A stretch of 64,000 bases of DNA from Ostrea edulis (lineage: Eukaryota): NCBI RefSeq assembly GCF_947568905.1, contig NC_079173.1:36332001-36396000 (forward strand), given 5' to 3'. Below, one piece after another: positions 1,284-33,824 of this stretch. A program made the position numbers and the translations under genes. The notes below the pieces were generated by a model that saw only the letters and a program-made list of their open reading frames with translations, was not told the origin of the DNA and did not search any database. Position 1 is the stretch's first letter. Each line of letters starts with the position of its first letter.

Positions 1284-3394
1284 ATGATGAACTGGAGACG
1301 TAAATCCTATTTGTTTCAGTTTGTGTCTTTAGTCTTGTGTTCGGAGCGGATACTCGTAGCGGGTGAAAACTTTACGTTTACTGGAAAGAGCATTGCTGAT
1401 AGTAAGAGTGATCGCGCGGATGATGAATTAGGTGTGGACCCCGGCTTTGATCTTTTCTTTGCTTCTAATGACCGGGAAATGGAAAATGTTCCAATTTACT
1501 TCGCCGAACCTCTACCATCTTGGTTAAAAGGCACATTGGTAAGTAATATTTCGGTGTTATTGTTCAAGTCTTAAATAAAACATATTGTTTAGTTAAATAT
1601 GTCCATACGTTTTGGGACGATCTTTATTTATCAATCTTAAAGATCAAATTCATACAATAATTTAAATTATATACAGAAATATGTCTCCTACCTGGGGGAG
1701 CAACTGACAATTACAACACACACTGACATCTTACTGTCTGTCCTGACTTAGGGTTACGTAAAGTGTGTGTTTGTTTTAAAAGAGAAATCACTTGCAGCGT
1801 GATAAAATTTAGTAAAACTACACTTGGACGGTCAATAGTTTGTCAATGTGACATGCCTCCGACAATGTAGATAAAATTGTGCATTATGTTTCGGCATCAT
1901 AGTTATGCCAATTTCATATAGTTTTGACATGATTATGCTTCTCAAATTATTGCACATATAATGTCTTATTTGTTTAAAATATGGTATAACAAATTCGTAT
2001 ATCTATTGTAGATTCGGAACGGACTCGGGAAGTATGAAATTGGCGGCCGGCGTTTCACGCATACGTTTGATGCATTTGCCAAGCTCAGCAGTTGGAAATT
2101 TCCCGGCAATGGCAGTATTTTCTTTTCCACAAAATTCCTCCAAAGTGAATTTTACACAGAATCTATAAAACGCAATGACATTGCTCCCTATCTCTTGTTT
2201 GAATCCGTCAATCCACCATTCAATATGATACAAAGATTAGAAGCATTGGTACGGGGTATTGACAATATGAATGTGAACGTTTATAAGTTTGGAAACGGTG
2301 ATGTGGTAGCCTTGAATGATTTCTGGAAAGTCTATAAAATAGCACCTAGTTCGTTGAAAACTCTTTTTTCAGTGTCAGCCCCTGTCAACATGCAGAAAAC
2401 CCCATCAACATTTTCGTTTCTAAATTTCCTCTCCTCTGCACATCCGCTACCGGAAATGGGAACTGCCAATCATTTGACATACTTGTCGAGTGTAAATATC
2501 ATTCCGGGTTTGAAAAGCAAAATATCACTTGTCAGAATCAAATCGTCTGAAGAGAGGGACATTATTACCTCTTGGGAGGTGGACCGCATTCCTTACATGC
2601 ATTCGTTTGCTGCAACCGAACACTACGCCATATTCTTTGCATGTCCATATTATATCAATGTAGAGAAAATGGTTCAGTATGCAATTCCAGAAAAAGCGTT
2701 AGACTGGGAACCCGACACACCAACAACTCTATATGTAGTGCACATTAAATCTGGAGAAGTGTACACTTTAAAAACGGAAAATGTTTTTATGATGCATCAG
2801 ATTAATGCTTTTGAGCAGGACAGTTCGAAAATCATCGTTGATATTTCGTCATACAGAAATCCGGACTTCGTAAAGAATTTAGAAATAAAGAATTTATTAG
2901 ACCCAGTAAAACGGAACCAGTTTGACACAAGGGCATCTGTAAGGCGATATTCCATTGATATTGACTCATTAACGGTGACATGGAAAACATTCGAGGACTC
3001 CCGAGAAGCACCGTGTGCGTCGGCCCTGGATCTCCCATCAATAAATGAAAACTTTCGATATCGATCGTATTGCTTTGCGTATGGTGTGGCTTTGAAATGC
3101 AACAACAAATCTCTGAGTGATATAGCTCTGGTCAAGAAAGACCTATGCGGCCGTGGGCAGGATAAAATGTGGAAAATAACCAATCATTATGTCGTGGAGG
3201 CGTGGTTTATCCCGACTCCAGGGGGGAGCGACGAGGATGATGGTTATCTTGTTCTTCCGGTGTTGAACGGAGAGAAAAAGTACAGTTATCTGGCTTTTCT
3301 GAACGCACGCACTATGGAGATTGTCAATTCCGCCGAGCTCCCTACCATTGTGCCCTTTAATCTTCACGGACGTTTCTTCCAAGATTTGATATAA
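1284..3394 (+). CDS. Carotenoid cleavage oxygenase, RPE65/BCO family (BCO-like), about 545 aa, 2 exons
   Basis: Exon 1 is 1284-1538 (ends WLKGTL|gtaagt). Exon 2 is 2012-3394 (ttgtag|IRNGLGKYE), giving a phase-0 intron that restores the family motif WLxGTLIRNG. Four iron-ligand His motifs are present: SAHPL, YMHSFAATEHY, MMHQINAFE, PFNLHGRFF. ATTAAA at 3473. Confidence 0.92.
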
Positions 3395-3771
3395 TATATT
3401 CAGTCACGTGAATTTTTTTTTCATATCTTCATAATGTATTGTGTGAATTATTTTGCATATAGTTTTCCTTTTATTAAAATGAATATACGTGTATATAATT
3501 TGTAAGCTTTTCATGAAAATATTTTGTACGTTTTTATGAAAAATGTTTTGTACGTTTTTATGAACTATTTATAAATGCTATGCTATTTCTAAGCCTTATA
3601 GCGTTTTTCTTCAAATGAAGGGCCATTTCCTCTTGAAAGGGAAGGTAACACAGAAACGGCAAAAATAGGGTGGGGTCATTTCAAAATCTTCCGAAGAACC
3701 ACTTGTCCAGAAAAGTTGAAATTTATACAAAAGCTTTCTGACATAGTGTAGATTTAAATTTGTTCAAATCA

Positions 3772-3804
<33 letters not shown>

Positions 3805-4552
3805 TGGGTAGGGTGAGGTCACAATAAGGAATCAAAATTTTACATGTGAATGTATAGGGGAAACCTCAAATAAAGCAAGGTTATCATCACTCAAATTAAT
3901 ATGCAAGAATCCCAGGCAGTTCAGATTCATGGAGTTCAAATCATGACCTTTGTGGGTAAGGTGGGGCTACAAAAACAGATAAAGGCTTTATGTGGGCAAA
4001 TACAAGAAAATGATTAAAACAAATCAAAACGTTTCAGCGTTGTGTTGATTCAAGTTTTTTTTATAACCCTTGACTAATATCGAAGGTCATATTATTTTTG
4101 TACTCCACGTCTTCATACATGTTTGTGCAAGATGCACGAAGGCCTTGTCGATCACCTGAGTATTAAGTTAAAGGTATCACTATCCCCATGGGCAACGAAA
4201 TCTGTAATAATTTCCCTGTTCTGCAAATCTAAAGTTTAATATTCATCTGGAACATAAAACAAAAGAGAACCAATGCTCTGAAAGTGCCTGATGATGAAAT
4301 ACCTTGGATGATATAATACATGTTATTTTAAATCTAATGACTATTTTGTACCCGCCCAAAACTCATAACTCTTGGGTGGCGAAAATCACAATTATCGTAC
4401 ACCCCTTTCTCCTTTTCCTATATATGCACCTAATTTTTCATATCAAATCAGCAAAAATTAAAGTCTTTCAAGATAAAGACAATTAATCGTTATGACTATT
4501 TTGGTCTCAATTTGGTACCAAACATAAAGTTAGTTTTTCTTACACATATGCG

Positions 4553-4796
4553 CTATCCCGTGGGGATCCGGGTTAAAACAGGTTCTCAGTACCCCCTAGC
4601 TTTTCGTAAGAGGCGACTAAATGGGGCGGTCCTTCGGATGAGACCACAAAAAACTGTGGTCCCGTGTCACAGCAGGTGTGGCACGATAAAGATCCCTCCC
4701 TGCTCAATAGCCATAAGCGCCGGCAGTGGTGATGTCTCCAAATGAGTGTAATATTTACAAGCGGGACATTAAACGGTATTCAATCAATCAATCAAT
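4553..4796 (+). mobile_element. SINE-like retroelement with non-tRNA head and Deu/Nin-like 3' body (family B2), complete insertion with TSD
   Basis: 10-bp direct repeat CACATATGCG at 4543-4552 and 4797-4806; (CAAT)n tail. The body GTCCCGTGTCACAGCAGGTGTGGCACGATAAAGA is shared with copies at 8262, 18045, 34542 and 56130. Confidence 0.8.
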
Positions 4797-5586
4797 CACA
4801 TATGCGTTTATAGAGAAGATAATTAGAAATTGGTCAATTTGTGGCAGTCCCCCAGGCCGCAGAAATCCTGAAATTTATAATTAATGCCCCCCCTCCCCCC
4901 TGTCCAAAATATGGTTTATACCAACTTTGAAAAGAATTGGAAAGATAATTATCAAAATGTTCAGCTGTTAATGCACATATTCAATTCCCAAAACCACTTT
5001 TGCCCCAACCTGGTACCAATATCCCTAATCCTGGGATAAGTAAATTTACACTTTTAGCAAAGTAAAGGGCTACCAGTACCTTCTAAATATCCATTTAGTT
5101 TCAATTTCGTATCAATAGCATTAAAGAAGATTTTATTTAGATAATTTACACAAACACTACATGCCAAGTTTGGTTTGTTTGTTTTACATGTATATTGTTT
5201 AACGTTTTGCATTGGAAGAGAATATTTTTGAATTATTTGAGCATGACGACGGCCGCAGACCAATAGTAAAAGTCATCTGGGTGACTCAGGTGACCTAATA
5301 AACACGCAACCAATGGACGGATGTAATGACGTTTTATGAAAGCGCTGAAACACCGAGATATAATTATTGTGATATGATATACAGAGGGATTGCAGGAATA
5401 GCAAGAAAGCTTTTACAATTTAAAAATGTCCTCACCCTTACAAAATATAGATACCTGTACATGTGACTTTTCATGCACTGTATACTTGATATACACACAA
5501 TCACTTAAATGTAAATGTGATGAACTTAAAGAGCAGAATAAGTTTGATCTGTGTCGCTTTTAGGATGGACATCACCTGATAAGATC

Positions 5587-8293
5587 TCAAATAGTGAGTA
5601 CTACAAGGTGTATGAGCACTGGTACTAGTCAGCTGATATCGTATTTTCTACCGTCCGATGCCGAGCTGCCGCGGTGCGGAGTATTCTGATCTGTAAATGA
5701 AATTACTCCAGACTGACATTCGTATGACACATGAACATAACACCAAATTACAGTTAGTCTACAATACCAAAATTGTTTTTTTTTCTTCTTTAACCTGCCA
5801 ATAAATTCTATTTTCGGGTCTGTTTGCATGCGTGTTTATGCATATTTTCTACGAAAAATATTGAATAATGAACCACAACTTACATTTCACTCAAATCCGA
5901 AGATTTAGGTCACATGACTGGGATTGAGAGGTACATGTATCAATGCATAATTTAGCAGTTCCAGATACAATCGGAACACCTCGCCATTTACTCCGTTGCT
6001 TCGTAAAAAGAACAAATTCTTTATATATAGTAAAGGGCGAGGGGTTCCGAATGTTCCAGACACATATGGATAATGCATCCTACGCGGCGCTTTCTGATTG
6101 TTGAATCATCCTAATTCTTTTTATTGTATTCATCTTACGAACTGAAGGATCAAAATGATACTAAACATGTACTCTATTACTAGCAAGTAAAAATGTATGA
6201 CAAGATAGACAACTCTTACATAAATGAAATACAATGATTCCTTTACCTACTGTCCTAGTTTGAATGAAGTGGTGTAACCTGCTTTCATTTTTGTATTCTA
6301 TATAGGTTTTATGAAATGTATCACTGCTCGTTATCTTCACCTGTCCTGTCTTTACTTGCATGATTTTAATTTTTCTTTTTACAATTAAATAATATCAAAT
6401 ATAACAGATACTGCAGAATTTTTATCTTACGCGAGTACTCGGTATCGCGAAATACCTCGTATACGTCAATATCGCGAAATACCTCGTATACGTCAATATC
6501 GCGAAATACCTCGCATAGGTCAGTATCGCGAAATACCTCGTATACGCCAAATCGCAAAATACCTCGCATAGGTCAATATCGCGAAATAAATCGTATAGGT
6601 CAATATCGCGAAATACCTCGTATACGTCAATATCGCGAAATACCTCGTATAGGTCAATATCGCGAAATAAATCGTATAGGTCAATATCGCGAAATACCTC
6701 GTATACGTCAATATCGCGAAATACCTCGTATACGCCAAATCACGAGAGCATAAATTCGCGAGTTCTCTATTGATCAAGACTTTTTATATGTATTTTAGCA
6801 ATATAAAAATAAAAGCGGGTAATTCTATTTTGCGAGTTATGCTTCTCACGAAATTACGCGATAATAAATTTCTCGCGTATATTTAGGCATTTACAGGGTA
6901 CTCTATATTATATTTCTGATACTCTATGTGTATCTATAATTTTGATAAAGGTTTTGAAAGATAAGAACATGTCTATTTCAATTGATTATGAATTACTCAC
7001 CAGCAATTGGTTGTGCCGCTGCTAATATAGCATACGTCTTGCTGCGAATTTCAATTTTTACATTTCCATGAAACGAAAACTGCATCCCCTTAGTAACTCC
7101 TTTTAGCAGGTGCTTTGTATGGTTTATCATTAAAATCTCACTATCAGTAGTGTTTGTGGCTGGGGATGAGCAATGAATATCCATGATGGTCACCGTGAAC
7201 CGATGCATTGATGAAATGGTCCATGAACATTGAGACATCAGATGTTCGAATCGTGGGTATGTTGGGGTACTGATATATCTCGTGGACTTATTAATCATTA
7301 GGTCTTCTCCACATTCTGTAGTAATGATGGGATCAACTTATCAGCGAACTGCTAGACTAGTGGTTTTGAAAACTTTACGAAGAAATGAAACAAGAAATCT
7401 TATCTTCGTTTACTATGACCTAAAATTGGAAATTTTGAAATCTTAATTAAGCAGTAAATATTTTTATCTAACACAGTATTAACCTGAAATACAGGTTACA
7501 GGGTGACAAAAAAAAATATAAAAGCAGATTAAACTTGTAAAATAGCTACCCGACAAAGCCTGCACGCTGTCAGTTAGTTCACTATCGTCTGCTTCCCCAA
7601 TGGCAGACATCCATACTTCAAACAGAATCCCCGGATACAACCTTGTGTTGATGAAAGCCACATTTTCATTGGATGATACGATGGTTTCTTTTACATCTGC
7701 TTGTCCATAACATCTATAATGAATTCTGTATCCTCGGACGTAAGTCGGGTTTAATGAAGGTGTCCTCCATTTCAATAGGAGTCCGTACTGCGTCGGAGTG
7801 ACTGTTAGACTCCTTGGTTTACTTGATGGTGGATCTTACAGAAATTTAAAGAAAGAAAAGCGATGAACGGTTAGAAGTACAACATAAAACTGCAATACGT
7901 ATACCGCACTGTAGGTATACATTTGAAATGTTTCCTTAGATTAGAAATCACCTGTAACAAACAACGTTACTTTTTCGTAACGAAGTCGACTTATAGAGAA
8001 GAATATATTTATAGATATACATGTACTAATGAACACATTTTATGTTAGCTGATAAATGTCGCAGGAATTTAATAAACATAACTTCCCTAAGTGAGGAAAT
8101 GTTGAATATAAAAGCACAGAGACATATATTTAATATGGATACCCACTTCCGCCCCTACCCAGGGTTAAACTAACTATATAATCAGTGTGTGTGTGAATTT
8201 TTAAAGGTCTTATGTTTGAAAATTAAAGCAAAGCAAAGATCAATGACATAAACATGTAGTTGATTGATTGTATCTTGCTTAACGTCTCTCTCA

Positions 8294-8324
<31 letters not shown>

Positions 8325-11300
8325 AGACCGGTGAAGGCTTCAAATTTAGGCCTATACTCGGCGCTTATGGTCATTGAGCAGTGAGGGTTCTTTAGCGTGC
8401 CACATCTACTGTGACACGGGACATCCGTTTTTAAGGTCATCTCCGAGGACCCGTGACATTCACACCTGATGCCAAGCGTTTGGCGATGGAACAGTCACTA
8501 CCTGTTTTAACGACTTCGGTCAGTCGCGGCCGGGATTCGAACCCCGGCTTTTTAGAAACGAACATAATCTACACAAGAAACACCACACAACAGTAAAGAT
8601 TTGATGATGACAAACATTGCTACCACCTACATAATGGCGTTAAGCTGCCACTGAAGCCTACACCAGTGTTGCTGTCGTCCGTGACAAACACTACAGTCGC
8701 TTGGTTGTCTTTTATGATGACGGGTGACTGCGTTCCTTTGCCACAGAACTTCTGGTTCATAGGAAATTCCACATAATCTTTCTGGCACATCGAAGAATTT
8801 TCCATATCGATTTTGGTGAATTGGAACTGAAATCCAATTGTAATTGTTATGAGAACAACTGAACAAGGCTTTTAGACTTATGCATAAAATCAGGAACAAG
8901 TAATTTCTCACCCCTCCCAAGGTAATATCAATGTGTTTTAAAAAGGCATTTCCATACAAATGAGATGATGAATTTGCATAATATGGATGTAAAGTAAAAC
9001 TACACTGGTATGTATTTTGAATATTGATTTTGTGTAACATACGTTTCGTGTTTTTGATTATGACATCATAATATGACGTTAGCACTGCTTGTTACGGAAA
9101 TCATTATTGATGTAATATCATTTGTGCAGTAATAACGATATTGGATGGACGATTCTGATTATTCGCGTAACAATATTCTTTCTATTCATTTTGTGTATGC
9201 CCGTGCAACGAGTCGGTCTTGTTGATATAGTTGATTTACCCTCGTAGTACGCTGCACAGTATGTCATATTTGACATTGTCAAAACAATACAGTACAATAC
9301 AGAAGAAATCTCCCATTCCAAAGAACAATCATTTCTAAAGCTAACATTGTATTAGGCGTCACCCGGGAGTGTCATACCGTACAACGGCTGTACATGTACG
9401 TCATCACTCCTTTATAGAGATCTTTCATGTATCATTTCTAAAACTTGAATAGTTTCATACCATTGGGAACAATATGTGACCTGGTTATTTCAACAACAAC
9501 AACAAAAAGAAAAATGAAAAGAAACACACACAAACTTGAAATCTTCAGCAAAAATAAAACAGGAAAAAAATCCACTCGAAATAAAAAAAAAAAAGCACAT
9601 ATCACGAACCCCCAACCCCTGAGGTAATCCTTTAGATATTTAGTTATGTGCGGAGTTTCATCTCTTAAACTCAATGTTATTTGAGAATACATTTCATACT
9701 AATGTTTTCAGGTGACATTGTCCATTGACCGTCTGACTTCAAAATCAAGTGCAACCTTCTGACAGAGACTTTCTTTGTGTTGTTTCATCTTTTAAGTTCA
9801 AACTGTGTGGGGAAAAAACTTTGTAGGTTCATACATGAATTATTCTTCAGCCATAGGGATTCTCCGTGCGAGTGTCATTGTCAATAGTCAAAGAGAGTTT
9901 GGGATATCGCTTACAGTATGTGAGCAGGTGACTCTGACCATTCAAGTCGTTTGCTCAAGTGAAGTTTCTTTGAAGCTCAAATGCCATTAGATGTTTAATC
10001 TGGAAACCCCGACAATCAGCTAGACGGGCGGACACGCCCACACAGATATCACGTTCTCCGTTCACTGATCCACATGTATGTAAGTCATTAAAATGTTAAT
10101 GTTTTATTCACCTTATACCAAATAGACTGGTCCGTCATGATATTCCACTTGCAGTAGACATTTGAAAGGTAGCCGCCATTTATCCCAGGTGATGTAATAT
10201 TAAGGCTTTGGTTATGGTGCAATTTGACCGTGTAACCACATGCTGAAAATAGACATATGTTCGCCGTCAATAGTTTGCCAATGTATAGATAACTTTAATA
10301 AAATCGAACAACTTGCTCTCTTCGTGAAAAGGTGGGGGAGGTATACTCCGAATATTGCCATAATTCACATAGTGATTGCGTGGTCCTCATGTAGAGCCAC
10401 GAGTGTTCAGACAGTATTTTAGATATGGGGTTTGCTGCACACACAGGACCACATGACATAGTAAGAGTTGATATGGTAAATCATTATCATATTTAACATT
10501 ACAGAAAAGCCTACTAAGTTTCAGTCATTGCGTACGCATGACCACGATGGAAATAAATTCCTAACATTACTGATGTGTGTATACAACAAACTAAAACACT
10601 ATCCTTGTTGCAAATACACTTTACGAAGCCAAGCTGTTTAAAAAGCAATTGTTGAATTTTCCACTGATAAACTTTGCTTGTGGTGATCTTGTGGCCGGGG
10701 CGCTCGTTTTGCAGCAAGAAGGTCTCGGGTTCAACAGTCGAGGTCGGCGCCACATCAAACCCAAGATGTTTAACATGAATGTAGGTAATGACTTTCCATC
10801 TCCGAATACCCGGTATTAGAAGTGAACATCATGGGTGAAATTTAAAACGGAGGGCCCGAGTGTTCGTTCGTTTGTTTGTACCCTACCAACCGTTGGTCAA
10901 AATTGCGGCACTTCATCTATAAGCCATTTGGAAGGAACATCTAAATGACTAGGACTATAAAGCACGGCATTAACTGTACATAATTAACTCTTCTGATTAA
11001 GTAGATCTACATGTAGCTACCTATATGTGCTGAGTATATGTAACTAATTATATATAACTTATAATATGTAACTATCAGTATGTTATTTATTATACATAAT
11101 TAGTTATATGTCGCTTAGCTATGTGTAGCTAACTGTAAGATAATAATTAACAATTACTATGTGTGACTTCTGTTTGAAACTAACTATATGTTACTACTGA
11201 TATGAAACTAACTATTTGTAATTATGTAACTATGACTGTGTATAGGTAACTATATGAAGAAATAAGTTCCCAAAGGTCAAGCTATCGATTTTCCTCCTTA

Positions 11301-14300
11301 CCAGCACGCGTTATCACATCTGTATGCACACCCTTATAAAGCTGTAGCCTTAAGATATAATCATTCAATTCTTGATATACCTGATCTAATTATCTTAACA
11401 CTTGACGCAATTCCTTCTCCGCCCTCAGTCAGATAAGATAGCTTGATAGCAAACAGCTGACCCTTGTGATCTCTGGTGTTGATGACATAAAATGTGTTAT
11501 TAACATGTATTGGTATCACATGATACGCCACTTCCGGTACTATGCTATAGGTGACGATGTATCTCAATAATTGCTTTTCCCCGCGATAGGGATTCCAGGT
11601 AACGTTGATGAAATCATGATCGCTCTGTACGTGAATATCATCTATAAACGAGGGTGGGGAATCTGCAAAATGATCAAATAAATGTCATAATTATGAAATT
11701 CTTATATACTGTATTCATTGACAATGTGTTTTCCTATCAGAGATTGCTGATGGTTTTTTCTTTAAACACTTGAAAGTACATTTAAGACAAATTTAATACA
11801 CCGGTAAATTGAATATTTCATAATTTTGAAAAAGGAATATGCACCAAAAGCTGTTGTTCAAGAACTTCTGAATTAACTCTTGCAATAAATAAATTCTATT
11901 CACCACAACCTTGCATTGCACTGTAAAGGACGGGGAACAGTGCGCTTTGTCTACATGGTACGTGTTTCTATACTTACCTATTGCCTTGACGGACACATTG
12001 AAACCCCGCCCACCTAATGCATTAGTGGTATTCAAAATGATGAATGTGCTGTTGCTCTGTATCAGATAGTCTGTCCTTTCTGAAGAACCGGAACAATGTT
12101 TTACAGTTTTTCCAATCTGTAGACACGTTGTTTGACAGTCGTCTTGATTATAGCATAAATCAAGATCCCGGATGGAAACTTTCAAATAGTTATCCTCCTC
12201 TGTACTGATGCTCCATTGACAAATAGAAAAAGGTTGTAAATGGAATGGGTAACCATCCGACACTATGGTTATCTCCATTTCTCCTTTGATAAAAAATTCA
12301 TTATAGCATTCTGAAAAACAAAAGTCGCACATCAAATTTTACATGGTTTTTATCTCTTCAAGGAATAACACATTTTTTGTATAAATTTTATATATCATTA
12401 AAGCTGTGTGACCCGATGTTCATGTATTATGTTTGTACAAAATTACTTTAAAGCAGATTAATTACTTTATAAAGTTATTAACTTTCCCTTAATTACATGC
12501 TTGAAAACATCTGCATGTAAAAGAAAACAGTGAGAATATTATTTAGAAAGTAAATATAGTGTGGTACATATATAAATCATACAGTGTTAGACGTCTATAA
12601 ATAGACCCACGCGCGTCAGGGGAATCCTAACATGATGTATTAACTCATACGCAACTGTCTTGTTTCAAGGCTGAACGAGCGTAAAACAACGAATTGCTAA
12701 GAGGTATTAGATATTTTTATTTCTATTAAACTTATGTAACAAAATACACAGCTTTACACAGATAAGACCACCGATGATCTGAAAGTTTGAACTGGTCACG
12801 TGACTATCACTTGAAATGGCAGAGTGACGCGGTTATTTGTAAACATCGATTCAAAATCAAATAATTTGGGTTAAAACAGGTGAAATAATGTATGACATGT
12901 CACACAGCCTCATAACTACATACGTGCGATGATTGAATAGCGTTTTTACGAGATGGAAAAAAATGTTGTAATTCGGACCATACAGCTTTAAAGAATTAAA
13001 GAAACGATTGGATTGTTCGTCTCTTCCCAAAACGCATTTACCTTTAAAGTTGATTTTTTTAAAAATATTCTGTGATCCTTTTAATACCTACAATTTTTAC
13101 GCGAAGTTGATGTTTACAAAACACATCCAGAGAATGTTTCTGTTTATTCGTTATCAGTGAATGTATTGCTAGTATCAGTAGTGTAATAGGTCTAGTATTT
13201 ATCACCCATGAAATGTATCCCGTATTTGTAGGAACATCTGCTTGTGTATAGTAAAAAATAACGAATACAGAATCAACCGATAGTTGATACATTGTAAGTT
13301 CAGGAGCCAGTAATCATTTAGCCCTCCGATTTAACGCATTTATAAAGCAATGAAAATAAAACAAGGTATGCGCTATGACATTAAATGTTTACATTTGTTT
13401 ATAGATAATCCCAACGTACTAACAAGGGACGTGGGAAATATCACTGAAGTCCGTATACAGTTTGTTTTTGGTCAAATCATTATCAATTGATGTACTGGTA
13501 TGTAATTACGCTACCACTCACCTGATGTTAAGTTAACATAATCCAACCTTTCACTTTCCCAAAAAGATGTTTGTGCGAACATTGAAATCTGGTAGATCTG
13601 ACCTCTGTGAGAACTGGTATCCAATATGTATGAACCATCCCTGCAGTCGCTGGGTACCTTACTGTACACCATGGACGGATGAACGCCATATTCAATCACA
13701 CAACTAAGATCATCATAGTAAGTTCCGTTCCAGACCCAGTCAATGTGGATGGAATCATTGAATGCTGTAGCGGATAGGTTAGCGGGTGGTAATAACTGGG
13801 GTATAACTAGAAGAAAGAAAAGTGAATTAAAAATAAAAGTAGAATACACTAAATTAAATGAAATATATTTCTTACAAAAATGAATTAAAATCAATTTTAG
13901 ACGCAAAAGACTCTGAAAAATATGCATTTAACCCGCAAAGGCCAACAAGAGGAGATGTAAAATTAGAATTCAATTTCTATATGGGTAAAAGTAGATCTGT
14001 ATATAATAATACAACAGTAAGAACTCATAAAAATGAAAAATGTCAATTACAGAGTCATGTACAAATGATCGCATCTCTTTTAATATTATCAAGCATCATG
14101 GTGACGATATGTAAAATACAAGTACCTTCTACGTATATATAAGACGGCGGACCTGATTTTATGGAGGAAAATCTTATATCCAGGGAATCGCTGGGTACTA
14201 CTAAAGTATTGTTTTTCTCTGTCTGTGAGCACAATTTATCCTTAAAATCGCTTTTGAATGACATCAAACATCCAAAGCCACGCCCCTCAGTATAAATCTT

Positions 14301-15534
14301 GAACCATGTGTTATTGCTCACTTTGGTAACGTTCCAAGAACATCGTATGCCTGCGTGATATGCCAGAGGAAATTCTGGCGATTCTATCTTATAATTTTGA
14401 TTCAGATTGAGGTTTACTTGTTTCCTGCAAACTGAAAAGATCACATGAACGACAAAAATTGTAAACCTGTCATGTACTGATTCAATGACAATTTCATGTA
14501 TTATTGACCATAAAAAAGATAATAAATCGGGAATAGTCAGAATCTCCGTACCTGCATGGATGTATCTGGTAGTGAGGAGCGATCTGTTCTGTAGTAGCTT
14601 TATGACGTAGAATCCAGGGTGTGCGACAGTACTGATGTTCAGATTGGTCTCGTTTTGGCCAAGAATATACGCTGATTTGTATCCCGTCCCCACAATCTGG
14701 CAAGATTAGAAACTTTCGAGTAGAATGAAAGTCTTGTGCAGACAAAAATATCCACCTCCATTTCATCTGGTCAAATATTCTAATACACGTGCTTCATGCA
14801 CAATAAGTACAATGCTATATATTATTGATATTAAACTATTTCATCATTAGATATCCTTTCTTAAAAACAATAAGTTCAAAAGCAAATAAGATTATTCCAT
14901 CATACACCGTGTTTAACTCAAGTTTTGCTCTCTACCACTTTCAAAATTACTATTTCCTACCTCAGAATTGTTTGGTCCATTACTATTTTTTAAGAACATA
15001 GAAAACATTTGGAATTTCATAAAGACAAACCGGAACGTGTAGATGAAACATTATGTGCAACGATTTTTCCAAAGGTCCGATAAATTTACTTAATCCAGTA
15101 CAGTGAGTATAGAACCATTTTGAAAACAAAACGAGAACGTTATAAAATTCAGTCTTATAATTAGAGTTTTATTTTATTTTCTTACCTGACTTTCAAGTGT
15201 TAAATTTGTGAGATGAGGTCCCAGTTTCACCGCAATATATCCTGGGTAACTTCTCGTGAGCATATCTGGAGATGACAGTATTTATTTTGAACTCATTCCT
15301 TAGTTCATAAATTCATACAATCTAGCTTCTGTATTGAAAATAAAATTTTGAATCTTATATTGGGTATTTCAATCATACATATCTGTCAATGATTTTACGA
15401 TGGGGCACCGACGTATATGCTATTTATAAAGAAATCAAAATACTACATAACCAATGCTTGCTTTTACCTGTTCTTTGTGTGACACCACATGAAGTTGTAC
15501 AGCACGATGAAAAGAAAATTAATAACAAGAACAT
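5587..15534 (-). CDS. Secreted or GPI-anchored protein with alternating CUB and fibronectin type III domains (4 CUB, 3 clear FN3 plus an FN3-like N-terminus), about 828 aa (about 842 aa with readthrough)
   Basis: Phase-consistent GT-AG exons in minus-strand order: 15468-15534 (signal MFLLLIFFSSCC), 15186-15265, 14552-14696, 14126-14431 (CUB), 13522-13806 (FN3), 11978-12310 (CUB), 11381-11662 (FN3), 10112-10242 + 8631-8826 (split CUB: ...CKWNI..WYK|FQFTKIDME..CQKDYVEF..FCG..GF), 7550-7834 (FN3), 7001-7315 (CUB), 5629-5690 (to TGA; extension to 5587). Exons 2-3 and the terminal exon are the least certain. Confidence 0.8.
6410..6900. repeat. MITE-like element carrying a 27-bp tandem array (about 6440-6745)
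   Basis: Roughly 11 units of GTCAATATCGCGAAATACCTCGTATAC, bounded by TACTGCAGAATTT... and ...TTTACAGGGTA. A related element without the array sits at about 53135-53345. It lies in the last intron of the CUB/FN3 model. Confidence 0.7.
8262..8550 (-). mobile_element. tRNA-SINE of Meta/Deu-domain type (family B1), 5'-truncated at the B box
   Basis: Nearly the same sequence as the full copy at 34542-34877; (TTGA)n tail on the + strand; B box GGTTCGAATCC on the minus strand. Confidence 0.8.
10715..10975 (+). mobile_element. Old diverged tRNA-SINE (a similar fragment is at about 45180-45300)
   Basis: Degenerate B box, followed by GTAGGTAATGACTTTCCATC...AAGTGAACATCATGGGT resembling the B1 SINE head. 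Confidence 0.5.
12402..12987. mobile_element. TTAA-flanked MITE (Kolobok-like)
   Basis: TTAA on both sides; 15-bp imperfect TIR AGCTGTGTGACCCGA / TCGGACCATACAGCT. The superfamily is inferred from the TTAA target site and AG termini. Confidence 0.7.
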
Positions 15535-28582: not shown

Positions 28583-31500
28583 TTTTAGGTCACCTGCGTA
28601 AGCTCAGGTGTCCTATTGCAATCGGTCAGCATGCGAAGTCCGTTGACAACTGATAAATTTTGACTTTTTTTTGATAACTATGATTCCAATTCTTTTAAAA
28701 TTTAGTATGGGGCACTTTGGGGACAAGGGGAACATAAAGTGTAAATTTTAGGACTTCTGCACTGCCCAGGCCTTATGGGGCGAAGCAAAACAAAGTTTCA
28801 AAACTCTTCTCATCTTCAACAGCATATTTGTAATAATATTAAGGTGGGTCCTTAGTCCTGGATTTTTGGGGTTTAGGTAGCATTTTTTTGTTTGGAATCA
28901 ATAAATTAACATTCAGAGTAATGAAAAAAGGCAAAACAGTTAAGGGTTTCCATATTAATTTTCATTACATACACCACTAAAGTCATATACCCCGATGTAG
29001 ATTTTTATGAAATTCATTGGAAACAGTTATTTGTTGTTATTTTAATATAAAAACAACAAAATATTTTTTGAATTGCATTTATTTATCGGGAAACATGTCA
29101 ATAACTAAAACACATGTCATTTTCAATATGTTCATCAAGTTTTAGAAAAATATGTGCAAAATTATTGAATTAGCGTTATTCCCCAAAATGTTAAAAAACA
29201 AACAAATGTGGACGCATTTTCCTTATAGCATGGTTTACATATCATTTTTTCTGTTTATATTAGTAGAGTTACATCTGTTATAGTTATTCATGGGGGAAAA
29301 TCCATACCTTTCCTTAATAATTTCAAATCTATAGCTTCCAGATTATGTATACCCCCATCAAAAACTGAAGTCTGGCACCATACAGCTGAGCTATTTAAAT
29401 CACTCGGGATTAAAATTGTATGTAATTTCATGAAAAAACACAGATAATGATTCCTTATCACCTTGGTAAAATGTTTGTCAAAAATAAAGGAAATATATCG
29501 CATTATGGACTTGATAAATAATTGAATGAAAACAGAGTTATTGTCCTTGGATTCAATATTTTGACACATATAATTGACTATTTAAATATAACTAAGAATT
29601 TTGAAATATTTTATGGCTAACAAGATTTTTTACAATAACTATTGAAAAAGATTCCAACAAAATTTATGTTCCTATCATTAAATTATTGACTTTGCAAAAT
29701 CCTATGACGTCACACGAGTGTGGAACTACGTTAAATGCATCATGATGTAGAGCAGAAAGGCCTCTCCCAAAATTGTAAATTTTCTGATTCACTGGCGCTA
29801 GGACAGAGTCAAACTTGAGATATTGTGTATAATTTGTAATTACTCTAAGCGCTTTAACAATTTAAAATGTAAAACATGATAAGATTAATCAGAGCATAAA
29901 ATATAACATCCAAATAAAATAAAACAGTTTAAACATTACGAGTCCATGCGACAAACCAGCCTTTACTTTAAAAAAGAAAATATTACAAAATATGTTTATA
30001 AGATTTCATAAAAATATATGTTTTAAGGTTTGTCTTAAAATTTGTCTTAAAACTTCTGACAGTGACACATGAACGGATGTCTATCGGTAAACTGTTCTAT
30101 AGTGTGGCAGCTGTTACATCAAACCTTCGATCTCCATAGGTCTTTGTACGAACGCGGGGTTTTTCTAGCAATCGTGCATTGCATGAACGCAGAGATCGTT
30201 TTGGTTCGTACACAGTGATGAGGTCGCTGATATAGGCCGGTGCCAATCCGTTTAGTGCCTTGTATGTGTGTAGTAAAATCTTGTATTCAACACGGGAATC
30301 AACCGGAAGCCAGTGCAAGGACACAAGCACCGGTGATATATGGTCATGTTTCCTGACCCGGGCAACAAGTCGAGCTGCTGAGTTTTGGATTGTCTGTAGC
30401 CTGCTCAGATCTGTTTGGGGTAGCCCTTTAAATAGTGCATTTCCATAGTCTAAGCGTAATAACACAAGAGAACATACAAGAGTCTTGCAGGCGTCATCAT
30501 TGATGAAAGAACGAATCCGTGCAATATTCCGTAGATGATAATAACAAGAACGAGAGATGGAACTAATATGATTTTTAAAAGAAACTACACTGTCGAAAAA
30601 AACACCAAGGTTTCGAACACAGTCCGAGTTGGAAATAATGGTATTTCCAAAAGACAGTTGAAAAGATGGTGAAACGTTTGAATGTTTCGAAGTAAACACT
30701 ATAAATTCAGTTTTTTCTTCGTTTAATTTCAGCAGGTTGACGTTCATCCAAGATTTTATATCTGCAAAGCATTCCTGTAGCCGCCATGAGATAGTATTCC
30801 ATGTATCTGTAGGTCTAAAAACTAAGTATGCCTGGTTATCGTCAGCATAGCAATGATACATGATATGATGTCTGCGGCAGATTTCACCAATCGATTTTGC
30901 AAAACATTGCATAAAGTCTTGGTCCCAGAACTGACCCTTGGGGCACTCCATATGGAAGCAGAAAGTCCTTAGACTTTGCAGTTCCTACAACCACTTTCTG
31001 ACTACGACCAGTTAAGGAAGATTTGATCCATATAAGTACTGCACCAGTAATACCAAATGATACCTCCAGTCGCTTAATGAGAATTTGATGGTCTATAACA
31101 TCAAAAGCTGCTGAAAGATCTAGCACCACCAAGGCAACACAAGAACCTTTATCCAATGCTGTCACAATATCATGGTGTACCCTTAGAAGAGCTGTTTCTG
31201 TTGAGTGACAAGGACGATATGCAGACTGGGCCACGTCATTTAGGTTGTTTGAATCTATATGGTGCCCTATGCGAGCTCATACCACTCTTTCCAAAATTTT
31301 GGAAAGAAATGAGAGGTTTGAGACAGGTCTGTAGTTCCGTAACGAGTCTGGCTCCAATCCTGCTTTCTTTAATAACGGATGTACAATGGCTTCTTGGAAG
31401 GAAGATGGAAATATACATTCATTCAAAGATTTGTTCACTATTTCTACAAAAATAGGTAGCACATATTCTAAAATGGGTTTCAGAAGTGTATCTTATCTAG

Positions 31501-32255: not shown

Positions 32256-32541
32256 TAATTTTCTTTATTCTTTGGACTAACATTGCAGAATTTCGCAAAA
32301 TATCATATATCTGAAAATTTCTTATTTAATACAATTATTATCCATGTCTATTTTCATTAATGTATTTCATAAATTACGTTTCTTGTGGGTGTGAACATAA
32401 GCCATATTTCTCACATACATTTATGGTATACTAATGCTGAATACGATATTTCATTAATGATAGCCGTATATAACTTGACCAGTGTCTGATAAGAAGTCAT
32501 ACATTACGACATACACCTTTATCTGGAACATGGTTTCCAAC

Positions 32542-33824
32542 ATGAAGTCTTTAGTTTTCTGCTCACAGATCATTCTTTTATGTGGCTGGTTTACTGTTTC
32601 GGAAGCAGAGGATTCCAAACCTGTAACATCCGAGCTAGAATATCTCCGTGAATCTGTTGCACGTTTGCAAGGAGCACTCAATGATTATGATGATCGTTTT
32701 AACAAAATGGAATCTGCCAATCGCGCTTTGTGGGTGACGGTATCAAAGCAGAACCAACATATGGCCCATATGGAAGACATTATTCAAGGCTTGCAAGAAA
32801 CTGTGCAAAGAGAAAAAATCGAACTAGACAATTTTCCAAAGACACTGAGTGACATTTTAGCGCATGTCAGTGGATATAATGACGAAGTGAAGAACATCCC
32901 CCACAACTACACGACTGATGTAACTGACCAGACAAAAGCTCGAGGACTAATGCGTAAGTCAAAAACTTGATTTAACTGGTATACAATAAAATGTGACATC
33001 ATTTCAATTTCTATATCCATACCTGGGATAATACCAGCCGAATAATAGCTTTATCATTTTATTTGACATTCATGTGTCGCATATCATGTGACATTGTCTA
33101 CAAATAAAAGGATGTCATATACTCCACTGAGTGAAAGCTCGTGCTTTGGTAAAACGTGTCATTTACGTTTAACACATGCATACATTTAAACATGTACATA
33201 ATCATCGGGCATACTGAATATTACCAAGTGATGTTAAATTTGAACTTCATGATCATTAAAAGTAATTATTTAATTCATGATACTTTGACGAATCATAGAA
33301 CGTTGTCACAAGATTCGATTTGAAGTATTTTAAATATTGGAGACCGTTTGTTGATTTTTTTTAATGACGCAGATTAATTGTCTGTATTGCTTGTAGGACG
33401 ACTACTTGTTGGATCCTTGCCTGTACCTGTCGCTTTTCAAGTCTACCTGAGTGGGCGACAAACCACACCAAGTGGTCATCAGACGATCATTTTTGATACT
33501 GTCCAACTAAACATCGGGAACGGTTACCACCAAACATCAGGAATATTCGTTGCCCCTGAGTCAGGAATCTACGTATTTGCTTGGTCTATGCGCCTGTATG
33601 GAACCTCATCACACTCTGCACAACTTGTGGTTGGCAATCAAGAGTATGATGCTGTATATCTTGCGGTGCACGATGGGGACAATGAAAATGTGAGCGGCAC
33701 TGCTGTGGCACAGGTGGAGAAGGGAGAAGACGTCTTCGTGAGAACACACGCAGCTTTTAACTTGGGTAACGTGGAGAGTGATGCTGTAGGGAGGACCTCT
33801 TTCTGCGGATGGAAGATCAACTGA
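32542..33824 (+). CDS. C1q-domain-containing protein (signal peptide, coiled coil, globular C1q), about 279 aa, 2 exons
   Basis: Exon 1 is 32542-32953 (MKSLVFCSQIILLCGW..., heptad-rich, ends ATG C|gtaagt). Exon 2 is 33397-33824 (phase 1), with the gC1q motifs VAF, IIFDTVQLNIGNGY, SGIFVAPESGIYVFAW, GEDVFV and TSFCGW. AATAAA at 33855. An in-frame upstream ATG exists at 32530. Confidence 0.92.

What the first reader, a model, noticed from the sequence alone, without database searches (positions are those of the whole stretch)
5587..5690. UGA-CUAG leaky stop directly in front of a GPI-anchor-like tail: possible readthrough switch between secreted and membrane-bound forms
Seen in sequence: the last exon of the CUB/FN3 gene reads DQNTPHRGSSASDGRKYDIS-TGA-CTA-GTA..., and the same frame continues LVPVLIHLVVLTI-TGA. 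With the first stop decoded, the C-terminus has the layout of a GPI signal: small residues (GSSAS), a polar spacer, then a terminal hydrophobic stretch. Established: UGA followed by CUAG is the best-known high-readthrough context in animals (e.g. AQP4, LDHB, MDH1, where extensions can add targeting signals). Inference: one gene could yield a soluble form (stop) and a surface-anchored form (readthrough). The alternative is a TGG>TGA nonsense allele.
Basis: partly seen in the sequence, partly recalled or inferred. Interest (0 to 1): 0.72.

Follow-up and report, generated by a model that had tools for sequence, protein, structure and literature searches.

The report
Conserved leaky stop splits GPI-like tail
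An oyster secreted-protein gene ends at a "leaky" UGA-CUAG stop, followed in frame by a short hydrophobic tail; five oyster species keep this layout although everything around it has diverged, so the gene probably makes both a secreted and a membrane-anchored form by occasional stop-codon readthrough.

Summary
The last exon of a 12-exon, 828-aa CUB/FN3 gene on the minus strand ends ...ATC AGC TGA(5631-5629) CTAG. Thirteen hydrophobic codons follow in frame (LVPVLIHLVVLTI), then a second TGA (5589-5587).

The stop is not a nonsense allele. It is unchanged in four resequenced individuals from four studies and in one further haplotype.

The syntenic orthologues of Magallana gigas, Crassostrea angulata, C. 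virginica and Saccostrea cucullata are 52-55% identical to the window protein. All carry the same 10-mer, AGC-TGA-CTAG, followed by a 15-17 codon in-frame hydrophobic stretch. The flanks are otherwise near random: 27-40% identity, 7 of 90 invariant columns, against 10 of 10 in the motif.

A spliced Crassostrea RNA contig uses this exon and keeps the UGA. No SECIS element and no unusual RNA structure was found in any species.

Each lineage also has a signal-peptide-like N-terminus (not seen in the partial Saccostrea model) and a cluster of small residues about 9 residues before the hydrophobic stretch. That is the layout of a GPI-attachment signal, interrupted by the stop.

Best reading: programmed UGA-CUAG readthrough that switches between a secreted and a GPI-anchored form. 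Readthrough itself and GPI attachment remain untested experimentally. No RNA evidence exists for the window species itself.

The parts
5587..15534 (-). Whole CUB/FN3 gene: 12 exons, 828 aa to the first stop. Exons: 15534-15468, 15265-15186, 14696-14552, 14431-14126, 13806-13522, 12310-11978, 11662-11381, 10242-10112, 8826-8631, 7834-7550, 7315-7001, 5690-5629.
   Evidence: All introns are GT-AG and there is one open frame. The exons are collinear with M. gigas and C. virginica proteins by tblastn. Pfam finds CUB and fn3. There are 22 N-glycosylation sequons.
15468..15534 (-). Exon 1, with a signal-peptide-like N-terminus (MFLLLIFFSSCCTTSCG...)
   Evidence: It aligns with the hydrophobic N-termini of the M. 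gigas, C. angulata and C. virginica proteins. No signal-peptide predictor was run.
7001..7315 (-). Exon 11, the last (divergent) CUB-like domain. Its phase-1 donor joins to 5690.
   Evidence: It was the query of the big protein search, which found the orthologues.
5632..5690 (-). Coding part of the last exon: polar tail DQNTPHRGSSASDGRKYDIS, with the small-residue cluster GSSAS (candidate omega site)
   Evidence: Polymorphisms seen here: a synonymous change at 5677, and Tyr>His plus a synonymous Ile change in haplotype L007.
5625..5634 (-). Invariant 10-mer AGC-UGA-CUAG: last sense codon, leaky stop (5631-5629) and CUAG context (5628-5625)
   Evidence: Identical in the window, S. cucullata, C. 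virginica, C. angulata, M. gigas and RNA contig L006. The anchored flanks are only 27-40% identical.
5590..5628 (-). 13-codon in-frame readthrough extension LVPVLIHLVVLTI (hydrophobic; T at codon position 2 in 10 of 13 codons)
   Evidence: It is invariant in 4 resequenced individuals and in L007. The orthologous extensions are 15-17 codons and also hydrophobic.
5587..5589 (-). Second in-frame stop (TGA), ending the extension
   Evidence: The second stop differs between species (TAA, TAA, TAG).
5132..5137 (-). First AATAAA downstream, about 450 nt after the second stop: candidate poly(A) signal
   Evidence: Pattern match only.

Best explanation
The gene encodes an oyster-specific extracellular glycoprotein: a signal peptide, then alternating CUB and FN3 domains. 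Its C-terminal GPI-attachment-like signal is interrupted by a UGA stop in the UGA-CUAG context, the best-characterised high-readthrough context. Most ribosomes stop at UGA and release a soluble protein ending ...DIS, which lacks any hydrophobic tail and is secreted. A fraction decode UGA with a near-cognate tRNA and add 14 residues (X plus LVPVLIHLVVLTI). The protein then has small residues (GSSAS), a polar spacer of about 9 residues and a terminal hydrophobic stretch. The GPI transamidase would recognise this layout, cleave at the small residues and attach a lipid anchor, giving a cell-surface form. The 10-nt signal would therefore set the secreted-to-anchored ratio at the translational level. 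Shown here: the sequence layout, its deep conservation, the lack of allelic sense variants, use of the exon in Crassostrea mRNA, and the absence of SECIS elements or unusual structure. Inferred: that readthrough occurs in oysters (about 0.8 on its own) and that the extension acts as a GPI signal (about 0.7 given readthrough).
For: (1) AGC-TGA-CTAG is identical in 5 oyster species, which fall into 4 deep lineages whose proteins are only 47-59% identical. It is the only contiguous invariant block in the last exon plus 3' flank. Anchored flanks are 27-40% identical with 7 of 90 invariant columns, against 10 of 10 in the motif.
(2) The frame after the stop stays open for 13, 15, 17 and 17 codons and stays hydrophobic, although the sequences are no longer alignable. 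Composition-preserving shuffles give P = 0.005, 0.001, 0.035 and 0.011 per lineage. T sits at codon position 2 in 53-77% of codons.
(3) The loci are orthologous: a convergent RPE65-family gene follows in the window, S. cucullata and C. angulata.
(4) The stop is not a private or polymorphic nonsense allele. TGA and the extension are invariant in 4 individuals from 4 studies and in haplotype L007, while variants occur 4 and 12 nt upstream of the motif.
(5) Spliced RNA contig L006 uses the last-exon junction and carries UGA-CUAG plus a 17-codon hydrophobic frame.
(6) Every lineage has a small-residue triplet 8-10 residues before the hydrophobic start: SAS, SSS, NSA, SGT. The hydrophobic stretch ends the protein and is too short for a transmembrane helix. 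Signal-peptide-like N-termini are present.
(7) UGA-CUAG was shown by reporters and mutagenesis to drive efficient readthrough in vertebrate genes, where about 12 nt 3' of the stop suffice without structure (PMC4132726). Here too, no structure stands out.
(8) No SECIS element in any species.
Against: There is no direct evidence of translation past the stop: no Ribo-seq, proteomics or reporter data. No RNA run was found for the window species. The UGA-CUAG signal has been tested in vertebrate cells, fungi and viruses, not in molluscs. Among closely related Crassostrea the extension changes as fast as the 3'UTR (0.128 against 0.127 variable sites per column), and most changes are non-synonymous. 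Only the absence of indels distinguishes it, and that is not significant. The coding signal is therefore maintenance of frame and hydrophobicity, not of sequence. The GPI call rests on a hand-made rule check, not on a trained predictor. The hydrophobic tails (12-17 aa, some with His, Lys or Asn) are at the short or weak end for GPI signals. The current M. gigas RefSeq model ends in the retained last intron and skips this exon, so the tail is not used in every transcript.
Confidence: 0.58

Rival explanations
1. Readthrough is real and conserved, but the hydrophobic extension is not a GPI signal. It could instead mediate peripheral or short-helix membrane association, ER retention or oligomerisation. 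It could also act as a hydrophobic C-terminal degron that tunes protein level.
For: The motif and the hydrophobic frame are conserved, but nothing tested here distinguishes GPI processing from other uses of a hydrophobic C-terminus. The tails are short and contain His, Lys or Asn. Sequence-level constraint is absent among close relatives.
Against: A signal peptide, a small-residue cluster about 9 residues upstream in every lineage, and a hydrophobic stretch at the very C-terminus together form the classical GPI layout. Selection would not be expected to keep a leaky stop context only to destroy the product.
Confidence: 0.2
2. Termination at UGA is efficient and only the secreted form exists. 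The 10-mer is then conserved for another reason (a DNA or RNA regulatory site; for example, GCTGAC resembles a Maf half-site), and the hydrophobic downstream frame is a slowly decaying relic of an ancestral GPI signal.
For: There is no experimental readthrough evidence. The extension's substitution rate equals that of the UTR among close Crassostrea. T-rich UTRs favour hydrophobic codons.
Against: The flanks have diverged to near-random identity, yet four lineages each keep an open, hydrophobic frame of 13-17 codons (per-lineage shuffle P 0.001-0.035). A relic would have picked up stops and frameshifts over that divergence. The conserved block coincides exactly with the known readthrough signal, stop codon included.
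Confidence: 0.12
3. The conserved CTAG is an alternative 3' splice site. Joining the phase-1 donor of exon 11 to ...CTAG| would fuse the CUB domain in frame directly to the hydrophobic tail (V-PVLIHLVVLTI), skipping the polar tail and the stop.
For: The frame works out: the G of CTAG is codon position 1 and the intron is phase 1. The same holds in the orthologues.
Against: No polypyrimidine tract or branch site lies upstream of CTAG in any species; the preceding sequence is purine-rich coding. It does not explain conservation of AGC and TGA. The one RNA contig uses the upstream acceptor. One in three AG dinucleotides would be frame-compatible by chance.
Confidence: 0.04
4. UGA is recoded by another route: selenocysteine insertion, or A-to-I editing of UGA to UGG (Trp).
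For: UGA is the Sec codon, and molluscs have active ADAR editing (general knowledge).
Against: No SECIS match even at E<=10 in the window's 3' region, none at gathering score in any of the five loci, and none at E<=10 in the C. angulata 3' region. No double-stranded structure surrounds the stop in any species (z -0.1 to -1.0). The 5' neighbour of the A is G, which ADAR disfavours (general knowledge). The RNA contig reads UGA.
Confidence: 0.03
5. A TGG>TGA (or other) nonsense allele, or a pseudogenising mutation in the sequenced animal.
For: None beyond the layout itself.
Against: TGA is present in all 4 individuals laid, from 4 studies, in haplotype L007, in 4 other species and in an RNA contig. 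The rest of the gene is intact.
Confidence: 0.01

Closest known systems
Vertebrate UGA-CUAG programmed readthrough genes (AQP4, OPRK1, OPRL1, MAPK10, MDH1; Loughran et al. 2014, PMC4132726)
   Same: A UGA stop is followed immediately by CUAG. The stop and the 4-nt context are invariant across deep divergence, and the last sense codon is also fixed at the nucleotide level. The extension is short (MAPK10's is 13 residues), and no 3' RNA structure is required.
   Different: This is a mollusc (Ostreidae) gene for a secreted protein, unrelated to any of those genes. The extension is conserved only in length class and hydrophobicity, not in sequence. No reporter or profiling data exist.
Readthrough-appended targeting signals: peroxisomal PTS1 in LDHB and MDH1 in animals, and glycolytic enzymes in fungi (recalled from general knowledge; MDH1 readthrough is reported in PMC4132726)
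   Same: A leaky UGA-CUA(G) stop hides a C-terminal targeting signal, so one mRNA gives two differently localised proteins in a fixed ratio.
   Different: Here the hidden signal is a hydrophobic tail that completes a GPI-like signal in the secretory pathway, not a cytosolic PTS1 tripeptide. The stop sits inside the signal, between spacer and hydrophobic part, rather than before it.
Secreted versus GPI-anchored isoform pairs made by alternative splicing (for example NCAM and acetylcholinesterase; general knowledge)
   Same: The outcome is the same: soluble and lipid-anchored forms of one ectodomain, differing only in a C-terminal hydrophobic signal.
   Different: The choice would be made by the ribosome at a stop codon, not by the spliceosome. 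No alternative exon is involved.
CUB/FN3 extracellular proteins annotated 'cubilin-like' in oysters (XP_011445776 M. gigas, XP_052683512 C. angulata, XP_078320460-2 C. virginica, LOC134276943 S. cucullata)
   Same: These are the direct syntenic orthologues (52-55% identity), with the same exon and domain order, the same tail exon and the same stop context.
   Different: All are annotated as ending at the UGA. The newest M. gigas model even drops the tail exon. None is annotated as a readthrough or GPI protein. They are not true cubilin: they are much shorter and have FN3 domains.

Membership tests
UGA-CUAG programmed stop-codon readthrough | UGA stop immediately followed by CUAG | tested here: met
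   Window 5631-5625. Same in L001, L003, L004, L005 and L006.
UGA-CUAG programmed stop-codon readthrough | Stop codon and 3' context conserved across distant orthologues | tested here: met
   10 of 10 invariant positions against 7 of 90 in the anchored flanks, across 4 lineages with 47-59% protein identity.
UGA-CUAG programmed stop-codon readthrough | Protein-coding signature in the extension (open frame kept, codon periodicity, constraint) | tested here: inconclusive
   An open hydrophobic frame of 13-17 codons in every lineage, shuffle P 0.001-0.035, and T enriched at codon position 2. Among close Crassostrea, however, the substitution rate equals that of the UTR, and only indels are absent. 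The sequences are too diverged for a PhyloCSF-type test.
UGA-CUAG programmed stop-codon readthrough | Measured readthrough (reporter, ribosome profiling or peptide evidence) | not testable with these tools
   No RNA or Ribo-seq run was available. No proteomics tool is on hand.
GPI-anchored protein (C-terminal GPI attachment signal) | N-terminal signal peptide (entry into the ER) | tested here: met
   Hydrophobic N-termini in the window model and in the M. gigas, C. angulata and C. virginica proteins. Judged by inspection only; no predictor was run.
GPI-anchored protein (C-terminal GPI attachment signal) | Small residues at omega to omega+2, followed by a polar spacer of about 5-10 residues | tested here: met
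   A rule-based scan finds SAS, SSS, NSA and SGT triplets with 8-10 residue spacers in all lineages.
GPI-anchored protein (C-terminal GPI attachment signal) | Hydrophobic stretch of about 10-20 residues at the extreme C-terminus | tested here: met
   Present only in the readthrough product: 13-17 residues, best 12-residue Kyte-Doolittle mean 1.9-2.7. Absent from the protein that ends at UGA.
GPI-anchored protein (C-terminal GPI attachment signal) | Positive score from a trained predictor (NetGPI, PredGPI, big-PI), or biochemical proof (PI-PLC release) | not testable with these tools
Selenoprotein (UGA = Sec) | SECIS element in the 3'UTR | tested here: not met
   Rfam scans find no SECIS at E<=10 in window 3300-7400 or L004 15900-18700, and nothing at gathering score in L001 and L003-L006.
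Nonsense allele / pseudogene | A sense codon in other alleles or orthologues; other disabling lesions in the gene | tested here: not met
   TGA in all individuals and species examined. The 12-exon frame is intact.
CUB / FN3 extracellular proteins | Pfam CUB and fn3 domains | tested here: met
   For the window exons, CUB reaches E 1.4e-07 and 9.3e-07 and fn3 is weak. For the full orthologues, CUB reaches 4.5e-26 and fn3 5.2e-13.

The most novel reading that the evidence does not exclude
A stop codon placed inside a GPI-attachment signal and kept in the UGA-CUAG leaky context since the common ancestor of Crassostrea/Magallana, Saccostrea and the window species. The ribosome, not the spliceosome, would set a fixed ratio of secreted to lipid-anchored protein. 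This would be the first recoding-based GPI switch and the first conserved cellular readthrough gene described in a mollusc. It would also show that the vertebrate-type UGA-CUAG signal works across bilaterians.
Probability: 0.5. Interest if true: 0.85.

Novelty: new variant of a known kind. Interest (0 to 1): 0.78.

Why it matters
Programmed readthrough that unmasks a targeting signal is known for peroxisomal import and a few receptor or channel tails, mostly in vertebrates, insects and fungi. Here the same 7-nt signal appears fixed in oysters, in an unrelated gene, and what it unmasks is the hydrophobic half of a GPI-like signal.

If confirmed, three things follow:
- UGA-CUAG readthrough would extend to Lophotrochozoa.
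- A new way of making secreted and membrane-anchored isoform pairs would be added.
- Genome annotation and GPI-proteome prediction, which stop at the first stop codon, would be shown to miss such proteins systematically.

All five species' models end at the UGA or earlier. The idea is directly testable with a short reporter and PI-PLC assays. The full-text library held no paper that links stop-codon readthrough to a GPI signal. That is absence from this library only.

Tried and rejected
- **RNA evidence for the window species.** The look-up of sequencing runs returned only DNA holders, so the 7001/5690 junction could not be confirmed in this species.
- **Word search with exon 11 of the window.** No candidate was found.
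- **Exact look-up of the exon-11 ORF.** It is not in the collection.
- **Locus look-up for C. virginica isoform X3.** Not on record; solved by using isoform X1.
- **Selenocysteine.** No SECIS element.
- **A stimulatory or editing-type RNA structure.** None beyond shuffled controls in four species.
- **Nonsense allele.** Rejected by population contigs and orthologues.
- **Alternative acceptor at CTAG.** Frame-compatible, but it lacks a polypyrimidine tract and is not used in the RNA contig.
- **Sequence-level constraint on the extension among M. gigas, C. angulata and L006.** Not detectable; the rate equals the UTR's.
- **Earlier scan notes.** Nothing relevant.
- **Literature on the gene by accession.** None.
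- **Two papers that matched the readthrough searches.** Both irrelevant: one on transcriptional readthrough and one on an amber transgene.
Full report
**What is in the sequence**

On the minus strand an AG acceptor precedes an exon that starts at 5690. With the G carried from the previous exon it reads D-Q-N-T-P-H-R-G-S-S-A-S-D-G-R-K-Y-D-I-S. It continues with TGA (5631-5629), CTAG (5628-5625), thirteen sense codons LVPVLIHLVVLTI (5628-5590) and a second TGA (5589-5587).

**Chance**

- In this window 5 of 2873 TGA triplets (0.17%) are followed by CTAG.
- Only 16 of 7673 stop triplets (0.2%) are followed by an open frame holding a 13-residue stretch as hydrophobic as this one, with mean Kyte-Doolittle 2.73.

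**The gene**

I rebuilt the model using tblastn of the orthologues against the window and canonical splice sites. It has 12 exons (15534-15468 down to 5690-5629), all GT-AG and mostly phase 1, and one open frame of 828 aa. The protein has these features:

- a hydrophobic signal-peptide-like N-terminus;
- a short N-terminal module, then CUB-FN3-CUB-FN3-CUB-FN3-CUB and a 20-residue polar tail;
- 22 N-glycosylation sequons.

Pfam supports CUB and fn3 in the window exons and strongly in the full orthologues. A convergent RPE65-family (carotenoid oxygenase) gene lies downstream at about 1284-3394 on the plus strand.

**Is the stop an allele?**

Twenty public DNA runs from nine studies hold this stretch. 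None is RNA. I laid contigs of four runs from four studies on 5200-7900:

- The TGA, the CTAG and the whole extension are unchanged in all four.
- The only variant inside the last exon is synonymous (5677, CCG>CCA).
- Variants occur in the intron and the 3'UTR.

A further haplotype from another run (L007) has Tyr>His and a synonymous Ile change, 12 and 4 nt upstream of the AGC. Its motif and extension are again identical. Contigs can hide rare alleles, but a private or common sense allele is not supported.

**Orthologues**

The profile-free search with the last CUB exon found only two close relatives among 1.8 billion representatives. Following these gave the full set:

| Species | Protein | Locus |
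|---|---|---|
| Saccostrea cucullata | LOC134276943 | L001 |
| Crassostrea virginica | 'cubilin-like' X1-X3 | L003 |
| C. angulata | LOC128163876 | L004 |
| Magallana gigas | XP_011445776 | L005 |

Synteny with the RPE65-family gene holds in S. cucullata and C. angulata. The window protein is 52-55% identical to each. Pairwise identities among the four deep lineages (window, Saccostrea, C. virginica, and the M. gigas/C. angulata pair) range from 47 to 59%. The gene evolves fast: M. gigas and C. angulata are only 95.3% identical. The window species is therefore a further oyster lineage. Its runs are labelled 'organism A' and 'oyster metagenome', and I could not name it.

**The key result**

Every orthologue's last exon ends ...AGC TGA CTAG and continues in frame with a hydrophobic stretch:

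| Source | In-frame extension |
|---|---|
| S. cucullata | LVHVTLGVILLIKTL* |
| C. virginica | LDLVLLTLLTVSLFSFS* |
| C. angulata | LVMGIITLNLMMTSLKS* |
| M. gigas | LVMGIITLNLIMTSLKC* |

- In a MAFFT alignment of last exon plus 3' flank, AGCTGACTAG is the only contiguous invariant block.
- Anchored on the motif without gaps, the 45-nt flanks are 27-40% identical between lineages. Only 7 of 90 flank columns are invariant, against 10 of 10 in the motif.
- At the flank rate, ten consecutive invariant columns have a probability of order 1e-11.
- Shuffling the 60 nt after CTAG within each species gives P = 0.005, 0.001, 0.035 and 0.011 for an open frame at least as hydrophobic as observed.
- T occupies codon position 2 in 53-77% of extension codons, against 0-47% at positions 1 and 3.

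At this level of flank divergence, an untranslated relic would be expected to have lost both frame and hydrophobicity.

**Transcripts**

Cluster member P0056 comes from a Logan contig (L006, SRR24489161) that is spliced across the last two junctions, so it derives from RNA. It reads ...CCC AGC TGA CTAG, followed by LVMGIMTLNLMMTSWTS*. So the exon is used and the stop is UGA in mRNA, at least in a Crassostrea. NCBI models for C. virginica and C. angulata, and the older M. gigas models, use the same exon. The newest M. gigas model (813 aa) instead ends at a stop just inside the retained last intron.

**Other ways to decode or bypass the stop**

- *Selenocysteine.* No SECIS match at E<=10 in window 3300-7400 or in the C. 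angulata 3' region, and nothing at gathering score in the five loci.
- *A-to-I editing or a stimulatory structure.* Folding around and after the stop is no better than shuffles in four species, with z from -0.1 to -1.0. The RNA contig reads A.
- *Alternative acceptor at CTAG|.* It would be frame-compatible. However, the upstream sequence is purine-rich coding with no polypyrimidine tract, it would not explain conservation of AGC and TGA, and the RNA contig does not use it.

**GPI-like layout**

With X at the stop, each lineage shows three features:

- a triplet of small residues: SAS (window), SSS (Saccostrea), NSA (C. virginica), SGT (M. gigas group);
- a spacer of 8-10 residues;
- a hydrophobic stretch that ends the protein.

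The position of the small-residue cluster relative to the stop is kept, although tail length varies from 20 to 31 residues. The hydrophobic stretch of 12-17 residues has no hydrophilic residues after it, so it is too short for a membrane-spanning anchor. Together with a signal peptide, this is the classical GPI signal (established knowledge). This is a rule check of my own. No trained predictor was available.

**Limits**

Among M. gigas, C. angulata and L006 the extension varies as much as the 3'UTR (0.128 against 0.127 per column), mostly non-synonymously. The coding tail upstream varies just as fast (0.111). Indels occur only in the UTR, with 18 gap columns in 283 against none in 147, which is not significant. 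Selection therefore appears to act on frame and hydrophobicity rather than sequence. That fits a cleaved signal, but it is weaker than a PhyloCSF-type signal. UGA-CUAG efficiency is documented for vertebrate genes (about 3-31% in HEK-293T cells, abolished by deleting CUAG, with 12 nt 3' sufficient; PMC4132726). It has not been measured in molluscs.

**Comparison with what is known**

The signal is the same as in AQP4, OPRK1, OPRL1, MAPK10 and MDH1, including the fixed last sense codon. The logic, a hidden C-terminal targeting signal, is that of LDHB and MDH1 peroxisomal readthrough (general knowledge). The appended function, completing a GPI-like signal on a secreted protein, and the taxon are new as far as the searchable library shows. 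No paper linked stop-codon readthrough with a GPI anchor, none described a cellular readthrough gene in molluscs, and none mentions these loci.

**Verdict**

The nonsense-allele alternative is rejected. Conserved programmed readthrough is the best explanation (about 0.8), and a switch between secreted and GPI-anchored forms is its most likely purpose (about 0.58 overall). I rate it a new variant of a known kind, of high interest to the recoding and GPI fields, and cheap to test.

Noticed in passing
L005 13100-13900 (M. gigas) compared with P0039 and P0048: The current M. gigas RefSeq protein XP_011445776.3 (813 aa) ends ...RPING at a TAG just inside the retained last intron and drops the tail exon. 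Versions .1 and .2 (843 aa) and C. angulata include that exon. Either an intron-retaining, tail-less isoform exists or the newer model is worse.
   Followed up: partly
window 6443-6745: A 27-bp minisatellite, 11.3 copies at 89% match, sits in the last intron of the CUB/FN3 gene. On the minus strand it reads as a repeated YTRYFAILT-type ORF.
   Followed up: no
window 6292-6382, 6747-6928 and 5200-5380: Summed contig depth in four resequenced animals jumps here to 1e4-1e5, against about 30-120 for unique sequence. These stretches are very high-copy repeats, in the last intron and probably in the 3'UTR.
   Followed up: no
window 1284-3394 (+): An RPE65-family (carotenoid oxygenase) gene lies convergent with the CUB/FN3 gene (Pfam E 7e-63). 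The same neighbour is present in S. cucullata and C. angulata.
   Followed up: partly
window 7834-7836 (-), acceptor of exon 10: The FN3 exon 10 appears to use an AAG| acceptor (tttctgtaag|AT). That is unusual, but it is the only choice that keeps the frame and matches the orthologues' ...LYPPSSKP junction.
   Followed up: partly
whole gene; P0046 vs P0048: The gene evolves unusually fast. M. gigas and C. angulata are only 95.3% identical at the protein level, and the coding tail changes as fast as the 3'UTR. This suggests relaxed or diversifying selection, as in immune or gamete-recognition proteins.
   Followed up: no
window 30097-31234 (-): Reverse-transcriptase ORFs of a retroelement, with a weak RVT_1 match below the gathering score.
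   Followed up: no
window 32482-33824 (+) and 39024-41018 (+): A C1q-domain gene (Pfam E 2.5e-19), and a single-exon 664-aa protein with RING, B-box and NHL domains (TRIM-like).
   Followed up: no
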